DNA of 64,000 nucleotides, taken from Pavona decussata (taxonomy: Eukaryota). How positions within the stretch are numbered: position 1 is the first letter of the stretch; every line of letters starts with the position of its first letter. The translations under genes were made by a program, and so were the position numbers. The stretch is from the NCBI GenBank assembly GCA_977016875.1, contig CDRNST010000104.1:2728001-2792000 (forward strand), read 5' to 3'. Below, in pieces: positions 10,101-49,066 of the stretch. The notes under the pieces are model-generated. The model did not search any database. It was not told where the DNA came from and saw only the letters and a list, made by a program, of their open reading frames with translations.

Positions 10101-13100
10101 TATTAGACAAGGACTTTAGCATATAATAGCATCAAAAGACAAAAAAAAATTGAATGGCTTGGTTTAAAAGGGGCCTAAGATAACCAAGCCTAAAGAATCG
10201 ACAACGGTTCCAATGTGTTAAAAGTAAATTTCCATATATTTACCAACAGCAAATGTACAGCATGATACCAATGGCCATGACTTTGGTGAAATTGTTCGAA
10301 CAAAACCAAATGGTAAACAAATGGCATATTTTCCGGATTAAAATACTTGTCCCTTCCTAATGCGTGACGAGCGCAAAGAATGTCTGTGTAGGAGGCTCTT
10401 GCAACTTGTTTTCCAAACCATTTTACTGAAAGACTGAAGTACATAACCAGTTGCATGTTGTGTTAATTTTTTATTAGGTAAACATTGTAATTTCATTTTG
10501 ACCTTCATTTAAAATGAAGAATTCTCCACCCTTTTTTCCAATGTTGGTTTTCAGATGTAGGAGTCATATGTCTTTGATCCCATTTCAGACACCCATCGCT
10601 GATGCTATGGCAATAGTGTGGGAGTTCTTTCAGCCCCTGCTGTTTGGTTTGATAGGCGCTGAAGTCAGTGTTGAGTACATGGATAGTACACTCATTGGTA
10701 TGCGGTACCTAATCACCTCCTTGGATTGATAAACCTTATTTCAAAATGGCTTCAATTTTAATATTCTTTTGTTTACATTCAAATTAGCCCTTCTTGCCTC
10801 GTCCAAGGAAACAAGAGCATATTAAAATGAAAGCCATTTTGGAATATGGTCTATACTCCCAAGTAGTATTAACTAGTATTGGAAACTAAATAACTTTTAG
10901 GAAACGTTTTGCACTGCCAACTGAAGTTTCTTTCTCTGGTTTTGGTTGTTTGTATTCTCATGTCGAACACTGATGAACTTTGTTGAAGAAACAGGTAGCC
11001 AAAAGTAGCTGCTATCCAAACATTACAGACCCCTTAGAGACGCTAATTCCCAAAGTGATGGTGGCAGTCCTTTTGGAGTTGTAAGGGGCGAAAAAGCTTT
11101 TTACTGTGATTTTATAGGTGAACAGAAAAACAACATGAGAAATCTGTCTTCGATCTTTCTGACGAGTTTTCTTTCAGTCTAGATTGTTTTACGAATGTTT
11201 AGTTTTATCAACAGTCAGTTGATGAGGTAATTTCGCCACCGTAAAGAAATTCGAGTGCTGACGTTTCGCCGTGCATTAGCCCTTTTAAGAGCGAATCCAA
11301 ATATTTAATTACCTTAGGAACTCTTCTGATTAACCAAACATTCGTTTCTGCTCCCCACCGATGCAGCACCGTAGTTTGTTTAGAAACTAAGTCTCTTACT
11401 GATCTATAGATTCTTTTTCTATTAACCCGCTTATATTTTGACAAGAATTATCTTTCTCAGAGCAAGTATTGCAAACGTCCATGAAAAAAGTCATTTTTTA
11501 ACGTGTTCAATAGACCTTATTCGCTTACTTTGTTTTGTGGTCCCATTACAGATCATGTGACGTTACCCTAGGGAGTACAGTCAACTCTCTCAAAGCGACC
11601 ACTTCTCGTAAGCGACCACCTCCCGCAAGCGACCACTTTGTAAACAACCGTTTTGTTTCTCAGTTAAATACTGTTTCAAGAGCTCTCTCGTAAGCGACCA
11701 CCACTCAAATTTCTAAGGGACCGCGATCACTTTTTAGGCCAGAAATTTGACATATTCTTTTGTTTTCCGTTTCCGGTTAGCGACCACCCAACATATTCGC
11801 GTATGATCTGAGTAAATAGTTACTCAGAAGCAACAAAAGTTCGATTTTTAATGACGCTACCCCCGATAACTGACAGTTTACAGACAGAGAAGATTACTAT
11901 AATTAGATCTGTAGGTAAATGGGAATTGTTACAGTGATCTGTTCCAAAATGTTACACAAAGTTTCGTCAGAAGAATGAATCGATGTGAAAAAATCAAATA
12001 AATTAGTTTCTATTTGCCTAATTTTAGCTGCTAGGGTAATATTTTTAGGTAATTAATTTATCACTCCAGCATTAGGCTTATTTTATTGATCTTTCCCGTA
12101 AGCGACCACCTCTCGTAAGCGACCACTTTGTCGTGCACCAGGGGTGGTCGCTTACGAGAGAGTTGACTGTAGTCTATTTTAGAATTGGTCATATTCACGC
12201 TGGTATGCATTTTTTTTTTTTTTACTTCCAAAAAGACAGGATCGATTCTCCTGAGAATATATTGTGGTTTGTGATGCCTAATTAGCATATTCACTCAACT
12301 CGTGGTCCCGATACCCTCGGGATCCTGAGTTAGTGTCCTTAGTAGCGAAAGTACGAAATAGCGGGAATTTATTTCAGTCAAACGTCTGTAATATATTTTT
12401 GCCGAGGTTTTAGCTCCTGTCCGTATTATCGGGTTGTCCGTAATAGCGAGATGTCCGCAAGGCGAGAGTTGACTGTACAGCGAATAAGGTCTATTGGAGC
12501 CCTGGGATTGTTCGTGGTGGTAACCCTGTGTTAACCGAATGCAAGAGGTCATCCCGTGCTAGTGCCTGGACATTCCTTCATTGCTCACCTCTCAGCGTAA
12601 ATCCATGACACCACGGAATGACCATGCGCACTTTGGGTTAAACAAAAAACCGATACAGAACACAAGCATGTCACAAGCATGTGTTTAGTAATGATGAATC
12701 AGAAAATTAACTCTGCAGTGTTCGTTAAAGTGCTGAAGTGATCCTGGTGGGAGATTTTTTTCGGTGCCTCGTGCAGTCTCCTAACGCTCCGTGGAAAATT
12801 CATGGTTTCACTTTAGCACTTTAACACACACTGCAGAGTTAATTGTCTGATCCATCATCTGTGTCCTTGGTGCTAGCGGCACAACTTTCATTTGTGCCCT
12901 ACACATGTAGTCTAGTCTGGCCTAGACAATCATATCACCTGGACTGATGTCTCTGTTTTGGGTGTATTTTTAGGCAAGGCTTTTGGTTTGCTCACCATAG
13001 CAATGGTAGTGAGACTGATAGTTACCTTTTTTGTGGTTTCTGGAAACAATCTCAGTATCAGGGACAAGATATTCGTGGCAATTGCATGGTCACCAAAAGC

Positions 13101-14771
13101 TACAGTTCAGGTAAGAATGCATGCCAGTATCTTCGAGAGCTTCCTGTGATGACTGAAACATGCCGCATACCTGTACCATTTTCGTCGTTCGTTTGGAGGT
13201 TTTTCTATACCTACATGTATTTCATATAGACATATCTGGAGTCTTTATGTCTTTGAAATCACATGACAAAAACGTACATTCTGGAGGCCTTGTAACAGCA
13301 GACAAAAAACACTGCACGCAGCATCGCGCTTAACTTCCAAATTTCACTGGGTGCTCAGGGTGCTCATCCCTCCCCGCCCATCCTCTTCCCCGAGAGCTTT
13401 CTCGCAGGCTAGTTTATCCCCAAAGGTCTGCATGCAACATTCCGAGGTAGAACCTGGATGATGGCGTAGTCTAGCCCACTTTGAAAACAGCTGGTAGCCT
13501 GGGACGAGAGTGGGCAAACTTTGAACTATAGGATCGTTGGTTGAAAAGACGCGTGCAAGCCAACTGAGCGCATAAGGAGGAATGCATTTTCTTCCCTCTT
13601 TAAAAAGATCTTTCATCCTGACGAAAAGAGATTAAAGGACACTTTTGTGTTATAATTTGAATCCATGTAATTCCAGCACAAGAAAGATTTCTCCCGAAGC
13701 TACTGAAGATACTACTTTCGCGAATGCAAAACAATTTACATGTGACTCAACGCGCGGGGGCTTAGTATGCCTCCTCGCCCCCCCCCCTCCCCCCCCCCCC
13801 TGTTCTGTTACTGGATATTTCGGCGACATGTTAAGATCTTTGTCTGGGATGCAGTGAGGCCCTCCTCTCCCCAACGATCCCATAATTGAACGCGCGCCCA
13901 CTCTCGCTTTTAGAGATGGACTCCCGTTTGAAACTTTATCGCGTGCAATGGTTACAATGTCGTGTGCAATGAACCCTGGAAGAGGAATGCAGCGTGGAAG
14001 CTTTGAGCCATCTCCCGGTGTTTCTTGAGGGGAAAATGGTTGAATTCACTTGAAGCCTTCGTGGCTCAGAGGCATATGGTGTACGGAGGGCCTTCAATTG
14101 TTATATTAAGCACTGCTTAAACCCTTAGACAAAAAAAAAAACCTCTAGCATAACATAGGCCTTTCAAAGTGTGTAATTCTCTCGTTTCCAGGCCGCCATA
14201 GGCTCAATGTCACTGGACATTGCACGCGAACGAGGCTTTGCTGGAATGCGTCAAGAGGAACTTGGAATTCAGGTGATTTAAGTTGTTTATTAAGTAATGA
14301 AGTAAGTCTCAGAATGCTACACGTAAAGTAATTTATTTATCCGATTGCAATTAAGAAAAGGTATAAGGTAAGACTTTATTTATCGAGGGTAAATAAAGAA
14401 CAAAACAGAAGGCTTAGAAAAACTAGCTCTTAGCTGTAGCTTTGGTCTCTGTAGCATTGATACTGGGATATGGATGGGAGACCTGTGACCAGCAGCATTG
14501 ATGGTATCGGCTGGGATCCCTGTGCAACTCAGGAATCCACTCCAAATAAAATACTGACTTCCATGTTTGCTACACCATGTAGATCCTAACCATAGCCGTG
14601 TTGTCTATTCTCCTCACGGCCCCAACTGGTGCAGTGGCAATTGCCGTCTCAGGTCCCCGCTTGTTAGAACAGGCCGAGATAAAGCAGCAAGAGACTGGTG
14701 ACCAAGGAGAGGTGGAGCCTATTCTGGATGGTCCTCGCACAGAGGCTTTGTTAATGCATGATACCGTGTGA
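7196..14771 (+). CDS. SLC9B2: Na+/H+ antiporter, NHA/SLC9B family; join(7196..7758,8352..8527,9231..9337,9903..10055,10589..10697,12974..13110,14192..14272,14583..14771), ~504 aa
   Basis: All junctions are GT-AG and in phase. Motifs LPSLLGMLLVG, LRSIALVVILTRSGLELD, GFVLGAVTPAVVVP, GIPTLVMAASSFDDV (NHA2-type DD), FQPLLFGLIGAE, AWSPKATVQAAIG, ILLTAPTGA. AATAAA at 14868. Confidence 0.93.
8981..9118. other. Assembly gap (N run) inside SLC9B intron 2
   Basis: Run of n; flanking exons join in phase, so no coding exon appears to be missing. Confidence 0.99.
10729..10854. mobile_element. Short MITE (atagacc-type TIR)
   Basis: ataaaccttatttcaaaatggctt ... aagccattttggaatatggtctat. Confidence 0.6.
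11205..11398 (+). mobile_element. Short Penelope-type repeat (inverted copy + sense copy + tail), decayed; related copy at 22175-22352
   Basis: Both copies share gttgat(g/a)aggtaa...gcc(a)cc.taaag...(g)acgtttcg...tagccctt and the tail ctccc(c/a)accga(t/c)gcagcacc.tagttt.tttagaa. The minus strand carries a decayed ...gggctaa...cGAAACGTCagc hammerhead-like half. Confidence 0.55.
11509..12495. mobile_element. Outer MITE containing two nested pogo-like MITEs (11578-12169 and ~12310-12475)
   Basis: Perfect 17-bp outer TIR aatagaccttattcgct / agcgaataaggtctatt. Inner element TA-cagtcaactctctc...gagagagttgactg-TA. The second inner element matches the full copy at 56739-56928. Confidence 0.8.
12691..12858. 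repeat. Palindromic MITE-like element
   Basis: ~50-bp arms atgatgaatcagaaaattaactctgcagtg... / ...cactgcagagttaattgtctgatccatcat. Confidence 0.7.
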
Positions 14772-48701: not shown

Positions 48702-48894
48702 GAAAAATTTGTTTCTTGATCCTGTCATTATATCAAACAAAAAGGTTTCGTTTTCAGGATCGAAAATTTATGCTCAAGCACAAGCTTTCGATTCCCTCAC
48801 GGAATCTTTGTCAAGTGGACAAAGATTCCGTGAGGGAATCGAAAGCTTGTGCTTGAACATAAATTTCCGATCCTGAAAACGAAACCTTTTTGTT
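48702..48894 (-). mobile_element. Near-perfect 77-bp-arm palindrome interpreted as a minimal Penelope-type insertion with a U3-A8 hammerhead
   Basis: Arms 48736-48812 / 48818-48894 (2 mismatches); minus strand cac-TTGACAA-a-gattcc-gtga-g-ggaatc-GAAA-GCTT-gtg; flanking ttgttaga direct repeat (48694, 48890). Confidence 0.7.
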
Positions 48895-49066
48895 AGAATA
48901 AAAATTTTTAACCGAGAATTCCGGGTTTTGACGAAAGATGATGATCCCTCGATAGTCAATGACAACTGAGCTAATCAGATTCGAGTATTCGCGATAGACC
49001 ACAGTCTACATGGCAATGAGCTAAAACTAAGAGCGAGAAAAGAGCGCGCGTAGCTGACTAGCTTCA

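What the first reader, a model, noticed from the sequence alone, without database searches (positions are those of the whole stretch)
11205..48897. Candidate system: Penelope-mobilised short elements that each leave a hairpin
The 2-kb PLE defines a signature: TSD - inverted copy of the 3' region - body - sense copy - unpaired 20-45-nt tail - TSD. The same signature recurs in ORF-less inserts of unrelated sequence: 25449-25644 (12-bp TSD), 48702-48894 (~8-bp repeat), 23026-23340 (15-bp TSD, tRNA-like cassette), and more decayed cases at 36415-36530, 11205-11398 and 22175-22352. Inverted pLTRs, tails and minimal hammerheads are established for PLEs. The inference is that many apparent 'MITE' palindromes here are retrotransposition products, that they include non-autonomous partners, and that PLE activity seeds dsRNA hairpins in introns and UTRs.
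Basis: partly seen in the sequence, partly recalled or inferred. Interest (0 to 1): 0.8.

Follow-up and report, generated by a model that had tools for sequence, protein, structure and literature searches.

The report
Short hairpins from truncated Penelope insertions
Most of these small hairpin-forming inserts in a stony-coral genome are very short, 5'-truncated double copies of ordinary Penelope-like retrotransposons, which is a known insertion pattern; only one, a tRNA-derived repeat with thousands of copies, looks like a separate passenger element.

Summary
The signature is real. It reads: TSD, inverted copy of the 3' region, body, sense copy, 20-45-nt tail, TSD. The 2-kb Penelope-like element (PLE) has it. 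Contigs from two other read sets carry the empty site with one copy of its 12-bp TSD, so the insertion is recent and polymorphic.

Three of the "ORF-less" inserts are not independent families. A (25449-25644), B (48695-48897) and D (36405-38538 region, precisely 36405-36538) are the 3' ends of autonomous PLE families. Longer genomic copies run straight into RT/GIY-YIG reading frames.

In five families, element ends fall into two classes, full and 28-46 nt short. TSDs are about 12 bp. This matches the published PLE mechanism: two internal RT start sites, with both DNA strands primed.

E and F are decayed copies of one hammerhead-bearing family whose parent was not found.

C (23026-23340) is different. 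It is a tRNA-Ala-like, hammerhead-less, 240-nt-unit family with over 3000 candidate copies. It has partial tandems and tail-less inverted arms, so it is a candidate PLE-dependent SINE. No partner PLE was found. Other first-stage notes of this scan flagged the same family elsewhere in this genome.

dsRNA and expression claims were not tested.

The parts
19616..19627 (.). left copy of the 12-bp target-site duplication of the 2-kb PLE (ATGTACTGAAAT)
   Evidence: Sequence. Contigs of X4 and X5 join 19615 to 21613, with 10-12 letters fitting both sides.
19628..19748 (-). inverted, tail-less copy of the PLE 3' region
   Evidence: the repeat finder I1: 125 nt at 99%. In four other copies of the same family the outer end lies at q200-202.
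19749..21457 (+). 5'-truncated PLE body; RT plus GIY-YIG reading frame 19809-21494, interrupted by an in-frame stop at 20061-20063
   Evidence: ORFs. Pfam RVT_1. Homologues at 98% identity, and coral homologues carrying RVT_1. Full-length 858-aa relative in L124.
21458..21578 (+). sense copy of the 3' region, with hammerhead core CTGATGA..CGAAAC at 21491-21522
21579..21612 (+). unpaired tail of about 31-34 nt
   Evidence: About 33 of 43 scored genomic copies end at this terminus.
21613..21624 (.). right copy of the 12-bp TSD
25449..25644 (-). A: 196-bp hairpin insert, a doubly primed, extremely 5'-truncated copy of the 3' end of a PLE family; TSDs at 25437-25448 and 25645-25656
   Evidence: In L099 and L035 the family runs upstream into GIY-YIG coding sequence. 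Hammerhead cores are present in both arms.
48695..48897 (-). B: hairpin made from the 3' UTR of another PLE family, with an 80-nt arm pair and a tail of about 40 nt on the left; TSD not established
   Evidence: In L073 the ORF end lies directly upstream of the arm.
23026..23340 (+). C: tRNA-Ala-like SINE-type element. It has an inverted arm at 23026-23077, 1.15 units of 240 nt, and a 42-nt tail. TSDs lie at 23011-23025 and 23341-23355.
36405..36538 (+). D: 134-bp hairpin from the 3' end of a young autonomous PLE family; 28-nt tail on the right; TSD of 10-13 bp at 36392-36404 and 36539-36551
   Evidence: The parent, with a 701-aa ORF, is in L120.
11196..11388 (+). E: decayed copy of the E/F family. 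It has a long inverted arm with an antisense hammerhead-like core, a short sense arm, and a tail of about 45 nt.
22168..22340 (+). F: second decayed copy of the E/F family
   Evidence: (I20).

Best explanation
The window lies in a stony-coral genome that carries several active or recently active Penelope-like element (PLE) families. Each has its own 3' UTR.

Proposed mechanism. A PLE insertion starts with staggered cuts about 12 bp apart on the two strands. Each 3'-OH can prime reverse transcription of the element RNA. Priming occurs at one of two internal sites near the RNA 3' end. One site gives the full end. The other lies 28-46 nt upstream and gives the tail-less end. The two cDNAs run towards each other and are joined wherever they stop. 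When both stop after tens to a few hundred nucleotides, the product is an ORF-less hairpin of 130-550 bp. It has a one-sided tail and a TSD of about 12 bp.

Assignment of the inserts. A, B and D, and very probably E and F, are such mini-insertions from four different PLE families. That is why their sequences are unrelated. They are not non-autonomous elements.

C is a separate, high-copy, tRNA-Ala-like repeat with a 240-nt unit and no hammerhead. It shows the same two classes of 3' end, the same tail-less inverted arms and PLE-style partial tandems. It is most likely copied in trans by a PLE enzyme from multimeric transcripts.

Shown here: the two end classes, the TSDs, the contiguity with ORFs, and the empty site.

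Taken from published biochemistry: cleavage and extension of both strands, and internal RT initiation.

Inferred: trans-mobilisation of C, and any dsRNA consequence.
For: Empty site of the 2-kb PLE. One contig each in X4 and X5 skips 19616-21612, with 10-12 ambiguous letters.

Family P1 (the 2-kb PLE). There are over 1000 candidates. The scored copies are 97-100% identical. Most sense ends lie at q234-235. Inverted ends lie at q200-202 in 4 of 4. L124 is a textbook complex: an inverted copy, then a partial tandem, then a full-length copy with an 858-aa product, with a 12-bp TSD.

Family D. In all 13 short hairpins (134-545 bp) one arm ends 0-9 nt from the terminus, with one at 17. The other arm is 19-31 nt short, mode 28; four longer two-arm copies widen that range to 16-38. 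TSDs are mostly 10-14 bp, against 7 or less in nearly all controls. L120 carries a 701-aa RT-EN ORF and a 1.23-kb, 100% identical inverted copy.

Family B. In 13 of 13 two-arm loci one arm is full and the other 39-49 nt short (one is 68). All 13 single-arm copies have the full end and variable 5' truncation. TSDs are 10-15 bp in 8 of 13. In L073 the ORF end abuts the arm.

Family A. Ends cluster at 0-3 and at 30-50 nt. EN coding sequence lies upstream.

Family C. The 3' end is fixed at q~330-333. Inverted arms end at q272-291. The 5' ends of the upstream partial units cluster at q203-222. Tandem joints appear in all four read sets. ARAGORN calls a tRNA (Ala in 14, Thr in 2) in 16 of 20 copies.

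Literature. PMC8557442 describes 5' truncation, partial tandems, an adjacent inverted 5'-truncated copy and a 30-40-bp tail. PMC11167929 reports that both strands are cleaved and extended, and that two RT start sites define the tail. PMC4209133 reports dual minimal hammerheads 100-700 bp apart on opposite strands, ascribed to truncated PLEs.
Against: Pfam GIY-YIG support is weak: E = 0.063 on L120 and nothing on the window ORF. EN identity therefore rests on homologues with precomputed PF01541 and on motifs read by eye.

The window copy of B has no detectable TSD.

Neither arm of the window copy of A reaches the family terminus.

Canonical hammerhead cores are evident only in P1, A and E/F, not in B or D. 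Rfam finds no hammerhead anywhere in the window.

For C, no PLE shares its 3' end among the five families examined. TSDs of most C copies do not exceed controls.

Confidence: 0.8

Rival explanations
1. One reading: the ORF-less hairpins are a guild of independent non-autonomous elements, each with its own master copies, that parasitise PLE enzymes.
For: The sequences are unrelated to each other and to the 2-kb PLE. C really is an independent ORF-less family. Non-autonomous PLE derivatives are known: MRC1 in PMC8557442 and animal retrozymes in bioRxiv 10.64898/2026.07.22.740005.
Against: A, B and D continue upstream into PLE reading frames in longer copies. Arm length varies continuously from about 60 nt to 1.2 kb within one family. 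This is what 5' truncation of the autonomous RNA predicts.
Confidence: 0.1
2. The hairpins are MITEs or foldback DNA transposons moved by a transposase.
For: They have a palindromic shape and small size. Covariance models score them like plant MIR/MITE-type hairpins, below threshold. Elements that look like true TIR transposons by eye lie in the same window.
Against: Outer ends are asymmetric by 28-46 nt and inner ends vary. TSDs are about 12 bp and range 7-15. The arms are the 3' UTRs of RT-encoding elements. Single-arm, 5'-truncated copies are common.
Confidence: 0.03
3. C is not PLE-dependent. It is an ordinary LINE-dependent tRNA SINE that also expanded as a satellite. Alternatively, it is copied by rolling-circle reverse transcription of a circular RNA.
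For: No partner PLE was found. TSDs are weak in most copies. Terminal redundancy of about 37-40 nt and multi-unit arrays fit a circular or multimeric template. Another first-stage note raises the circular-RNA idea (s1-488970).
Against: The 3' end has no poly(A) or microsatellite. There are two discrete 3' end classes about 45 nt apart. In 7 of 21 copies an inverted arm duplicates the 3' region (LINE twin priming inverts a segment but does not duplicate it; this point is from my own knowledge). The same architecture occurs in four PLE families of this genome. C has no ribozyme that could make circles.
Confidence: 0.3

Closest known systems
[quoted passage not shown] 2021, PMC8557442)
   Same: Heavy 5' truncation; partial tandems forming pLTRs; an adjacent inverted 5'-truncated copy; a 30-40-bp tail at one end; variable TSD; hammerhead in the repeat. 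All are seen here in families P1, A, B and D.
   Different: Here both cDNAs are often so short that nothing but a hairpin of 130-550 bp remains. Tails reach about 46 nt in some families. B and D show no canonical hammerhead core.
PAc (Poseidon of Anolis) in vitro TPRT (Frangieh et al. 2024, PMC11167929)
   Same: Both strands are cleaved and extended. RT starts at two adjacent internal sites whose spacing equals the tail. Here every family shows two end classes, and either class can sit on either arm (L124, L097 and the A copy in the window).
   Different: This work has no biochemistry. Spacing differs by family, from 28 to 46 nt. Targets here are not obviously restricted to ATT motifs; this was not analysed.
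Dual minimal hammerheads on opposite strands 100-700 bp apart (Cervera and de la Pena 2014, PMC4209133)
   Same: The same objects, already ascribed there to truncated PLEs. A, E/F and P1 carry the CUGANGA..GAAAC GUC core without helix III.
   Different: That paper did not dissect ends, tails or TSDs. B and D would escape a hammerhead-based search.
Non-autonomous PLE derivatives: MRC1/Chlamys (PMC8557442) and animal non-LTR retrozymes (bioRxiv 10.64898/2026.07.22.740005; PMC7761336)
   Same: C is ORF-less, makes pLTR-like partial tandems and head-to-tail arrays, and has high copy number.
   Different: C has a tRNA-like module and no hammerhead. No 3' similarity to an autonomous PLE has been found yet.
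MITEs
   Same: Small, palindromic, abundant, and located in or near genes.
   Different: No fixed TIR ends, no constant TSD, RNA-mediated origin.

Membership tests
Penelope-like element, C-terminal EN+ type (families P1, A, B, D) | Reverse transcriptase domain | tested here: met
   Pfam RVT_1: E = 6e-6 on the window ORF (below the curated cut-off) and 5e-12 on the L120 ORF. Coral homologues carry RVT_1.
Penelope-like element, C-terminal EN+ type (families P1, A, B, D) | GIY-YIG endonuclease C-terminal to the RT | tested here: inconclusive
   Pfam GIY-YIG gives only E = 0.063 on the L120 EN region and nothing on the window ORF. Several close homologues carry precomputed PF01541. The YK..C..C...Y(I/V)G.T motif was read by eye.
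Penelope-like element, C-terminal EN+ type (families P1, A, B, D) | 5' truncation with partial tandem and/or adjacent inverted 5'-truncated copy (pLTRs) | tested here: met
Penelope-like element, C-terminal EN+ type (families P1, A, B, D) | Optional 30-40-bp tail at one end | tested here: met
   Tail lengths: P1 33-35 nt, D mode 28, B 39-49, A 30-50.
Penelope-like element, C-terminal EN+ type (families P1, A, B, D) | Hammerhead ribozyme motif in the repeat | tested here: inconclusive
   The core pattern occurs 4 times against 0.1 expected, in P1 and in both arms of A. It is also present in E/F by eye. It is not evident in B or D. There is no Rfam hammerhead hit. Activity was not tested.
MITE / TIR DNA transposon | Fixed symmetric terminal inverted repeats and constant TSD length | tested here: not met
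   Outer ends differ by 28-46 nt, inner ends vary, and TSDs range 7-15 bp.
tRNA-derived SINE (family C) | tRNA-derived module with internal promoter boxes | tested here: met
   ARAGORN calls a 73-77-nt tRNA-like structure (Ala, GGC, in 14; Thr, GGT, in 2) in 16 of 20 copies. It calls none in the decayed window copy. Promoter activity was not tested. A T6-T8 run follows the module directly.
tRNA-derived SINE (family C) | Copies start at the tRNA head and end in a tail shared with the partner retroelement | tested here: not met
   Copies start in an upstream unit, clustered at q203-222, that is at the 3' edge of the preceding tRNA-like module. No shared tail was found with five PLE families.
Non-autonomous PLE (MRC1-like) | pLTR-forming partial tandems and head-to-tail arrays | tested here: met
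   'Goes back ~235' joints appear in four read sets.
Non-autonomous PLE (MRC1-like) | 3' end similar to an autonomous PLE family | tested here: inconclusive
   Negative against P1, A, B, D and E/F only. The genome's other PLE families could not be fetched.
Animal non-LTR retrozyme | Hammerhead ribozyme in every unit | tested here: not met
   The C unit has no CUGANGA..GAAA core on either strand (read by eye) and no Rfam ribozyme hit.

The most novel reading that the evidence does not exclude
Family C is a tRNA-Ala-derived, hammerhead-less, terminally redundant retroelement with thousands of copies. It is copied in trans by a Penelope-like enzyme from multimeric transcripts. Its tRNA-like module, followed by a T-run, marks where copies begin. 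This could work through RNase Z-type processing or as a strong stop for the RT. Either way it would take the place that the hammerhead holds in PLEs and retrozymes. If so, this would be a SINE-PLE partnership, a class of SINE not tied to a LINE.
Probability: 0.4. Interest if true: 0.65.

Novelty: new member of a known kind. Interest (0 to 1): 0.4.

Why it matters
For annotation. In PLE-rich invertebrate genomes a sizeable share of small palindromes that pipelines would call MITEs or miRNA-like hairpins are mini-insertions of PLEs. Covariance models score B at 69 bits against a plant MIR family. These inserts can be recognised by a one-sided tail and a TSD of about 12 bp.

For mechanism. Five families in one genome give natural replicates of the two-start-site, both-strand priming model that so far rests on one lizard element in vitro. 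Two of the families are 97-100% identical among copies and one insertion is polymorphic, so the system is live and could be studied in coral populations.

For C. If family C is confirmed as PLE-dependent, the SINE concept would extend to a third class of retrotransposon.

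Tried and rejected
Rfam at the E-value threshold gave only sub-threshold plant MIR/sRNA hits on A, B and D. These are generic long-hairpin matches. No hammerhead family matched.

Family A first looked like a discrete element of about 265 nt, because three copies began at the same query position. I rejected this when the upstream flanks translated into the EN C-terminus.

L096, where inverted A arms lie 4.8 kb apart, turned out to be a PLE carrying a nested foreign insertion. 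It is not a clean example.

The partner search for C used blastn and an nhmmer profile of its 3' domain. These were run against all 124 loci, the window, and the full-length P1 (L124) and D (L120) elements. Nothing was found.

E/F rests on six chance copies in loci already held.

TSD scans of C copies with a direct upstream unit do not exceed controls.

The idea that the 12-bp TSD of the 2-kb PLE equals the element's own next 12-14 nt shrank on inspection of L124. What remains is a 9-nt identity (CTGAAATAT) plus flanking partial matches. It is absent at L124's own junction. I treat it as microhomology, not as a rule.

Gene context of B and D (UTR or intron) was not established by a quick ORF listing.

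Full report
SETTING

The window is G000:C104:2728001-2792000 of a 602-Mb assembly. Public runs that hold it are labelled with one coded species and 'coral metagenome'. The closest protein relatives of its retroelement ORFs come from Stylophora, Pocillopora, Oculina, Montipora and Porites. The organism is therefore a stony coral.

THE ANCHOR ELEMENT

The 2-kb insert is a 5'-truncated Penelope-like element (PLE).
- A reading frame at 19809-21494 is split by one in-frame stop at 20061-20063. It carries an RT domain (Pfam RVT_1) and a C-terminal region with the GIY-YIG-type motif (read by eye).
- Pfam's GIY-YIG model is only marginal on a sister family (E = 0.063). It is precomputed on several close homologues.
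- The arms 19624-19748 and 21458-21582 are 125 nt and 99% complementary.
- I corrected the TSD to ATGTACTGAAAT at 19616-19627 and 21613-21624. The insert is then 19628-21612 and the tail about 31-34 nt.

Reads give the decisive check. In run X4 (same species label, another sample) and in run X5 (a coral metagenome) one contig each runs from 19450-19615 straight into 21613-217xx. The contig skips 1997 nt, and 10-12 letters fit both sides. That is the empty site with a single TSD copy, so the insertion is real, precise and polymorphic.

The family, which I call P1, has over 1000 candidate copies. The scored copies are 97-100% identical.

A contig from another assembly (L124) shows the textbook PLE complex. 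It holds a 1.1-kb inverted copy with full tail, then a 5'-truncated sense copy, then a full-length copy with an 858-aa product that ends at the tail-less site. A 12-bp TSD flanks the whole complex.

THE SIX SHORT INSERTS

D (about 36405-36538).
- Thirteen other short hairpins (142-545 bp) are all built the same way as the window copy. Four longer two-arm copies (1.5-3.4 kb, including L120) show the same ends.
- One arm ends 0-9 nt from the family terminus (17 in one copy). The other is 16-38 nt short, with a mode of 28.
- The centre of symmetry differs in every copy.
- TSDs are mostly 10-14 bp, while displaced controls give 7 or less with one exception.
- Searching with the inner part of a long hairpin found 97-100% identical copies, including inverted pairs 1.1-3 kb apart.
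- L120 holds a 701-aa RT-EN ORF. Its last codons and 3' UTR are the D sequence. It also has a 1.23-kb, 100% identical inverted copy.
- D is therefore the 3' end of a young autonomous PLE.

B (48695-48897).
- Most genomic copies are single arms with the complete 3' end and variable 5' truncation.
- In 13 two-arm loci one arm is complete and the other 39-49 nt short, with one at 68.
- In L073 the end of an EN reading frame (...RRIREAIEIH...LPAIY...) stops 150 nt upstream of the terminus on the same strand.
- Eight of the 13 two-arm loci have 10-15-bp TSDs. The window copy does not.

A (25449-25644).
- The 12-bp TSD is perfect.
- The family continues further on both sides in other copies. Upstream it runs into the C-terminal codons of an EN frame, with tblastn hits in L035 and ORFs in L099.
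- Ends across 22 loci fall at 0-3 or at 30-50 nt from the terminus. The two arms of the window copy end at 44 and 61 nt.

E and F.
- They are two old copies of one further family.
- The family carries a minimal hammerhead core (CTGACGA..CGAAAC GTC, read by eye) and a tail of about 45 nt.
- Their hairpins are weak.

C (23026-23340) is of another kind.
- There are over 3000 first-look candidates.
- The unit is 240 nt. Copies are 1.1-1.6 units long or form arrays.
- The 3' end is fixed at query position about 330-333.
- The upstream partial unit begins at q203-222 in about half of 30 cases. This is the 3' edge of a tRNA-like module that is followed by a T6-T8 run.
- ARAGORN calls a tRNA-like structure in 16 of 20 copies: Ala (GGC) in 14 and Thr (GGT) in 2.
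- Seven of 21 copies carry an inverted arm whose outer end lies at q272-291, that is 42-61 nt short of the terminus.
- TSDs are clear in the window copy (15 bp) and in a few others (8-11 bp). In most copies they do not exceed controls.
- All four read sets contain contigs that 'go back' about 235 nt, which indicates tandem units elsewhere.
- A divergent 1.2-kb contig of X15 aligns up to 23010 and resumes at 24141 with 48 other letters between. This is consistent with a haplotype or relative that lacks both C and the neighbouring TIR element.
- C has no hammerhead core and no Rfam ribozyme hit.
- It has no similarity to the 3' ends or the full-length sequences of the PLE families in hand.

MECHANISM

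The pattern seen in five families is: two discrete end classes, either class on either arm, variable inner ends, and TSDs of about 12 bp. This matches the published PLE insertion architecture.
- Craig et al. 2021 (PMC8557442) describe 5' truncation, partial tandems, an adjacent inverted 5'-truncated copy and a 30-40-bp tail at either end.
- Frangieh et al. 2024 (PMC11167929) show in vitro that a PLE protein cleaves and extends both strands. They also show that reverse transcription starts at two adjacent internal sites whose spacing is the tail.
- Cervera and de la Pena 2014 (PMC4209133) had already seen dual minimal hammerheads 100-700 bp apart on opposite strands and ascribed them to truncated PLEs.

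The hairpins here are that phenomenon at its short extreme.

WHAT IS NOT SHOWN

- If transcribed, A-D would fold into long duplexes (z from -7 to -21). No RNA evidence was obtained. All runs were contigs, and depth over repeats is uninformative.
- Intron or UTR placement was not verified.
- Other inverted repeats in the window look like ordinary TIR transposons, judged by eye only. Examples are 23398-24131, 18917-19180, and 37854-38386 with a MADF-like frame.
- Only about 6 of roughly 19 inverted-repeat structures between 11 and 49 kb are PLE-type.

VERDICT

The reading that these are retrotransposition products of PLEs is right, and it is already in the literature. Other first-stage notes of this scan describe the same tRNA family on other stretches of this genome. 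I did not test those notes.

Noticed in passing
window 22354-22719: A contig of run X4 lacks these 366 nt exactly (record 10). This is a second polymorphic insertion, right next to F. It begins with the 101-bp perfect-type palindrome 22359-22459. Its type is unknown.
   Followed up: partly
window 23398-24131: A 734-bp element with symmetric terminal inverted repeats (CACACACGAAGGGACTAGTCC...). It is absent, together with C, from a divergent contig of X15. It looks like a DNA transposon.
   Followed up: no
window 37854-38386: A 533-bp TIR element that encodes a MADF-like stretch (MADGREEHATFQFIEEVQNCPDLWDEN, read by eye). It is probably a non-autonomous DNA transposon inside the AKIP1-like region noted by another reader.
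   Followed up: no
window 21613-21626 and L124:5740-5760: The target site of the polymorphic PLE shares CTGAAATAT, plus partial flanking matches, with the sequence that follows the RT start site in tandem copies of the same family. Seven of 43 genomic copies align through this stretch. This may be homology-assisted priming or chance. L124's own junction shows only 2-3 nt.
   Followed up: partly
L121:3092-3649: A perfect 279+279-nt palindrome of family D in which both arms carry the full tail. It lies next to a further tail-less inverted arm 2.5 kb away. The insertion is complex or double.
   Followed up: no
L108, L109, L090, L083: Family D copies sit inside (TAA)n microsatellites. C copies abut (ATCA)n and A16 runs. 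A bias of PLEs for simple repeats is reported in PMC8557442.
   Followed up: no
L096:2700-6240: A foreign insertion is nested in an A-family PLE. It has a frame resembling the N-terminal SAM-like domain of tyrosine recombinases (...IKVYLSAVRSSHIDYGFP...) and a zinc-knuckle-like frame. It may be a DIRS/Crypton-type element. No family search was run on it.
   Followed up: no
window 21650-21850: A very high-copy repeat lies just right of the PLE. Summed contig depth is about 124,000 against about 40-80 for unique flanks, with loose ends at 21776 and 21817 in all runs.
   Followed up: no
window 9615-9753 and 10717-10866: Two related hairpins outside the finding's range. They also give sub-threshold plant-MIR covariance hits. 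They were not examined for PLE-type ends.
   Followed up: no
window 19684-19715 vs 21491-21522: Only the sense arm of the 2-kb PLE matches the hammerhead core pattern. The single arm mismatch falls in the core of the inverted copy. This agrees with another first-stage note.
   Followed up: partly
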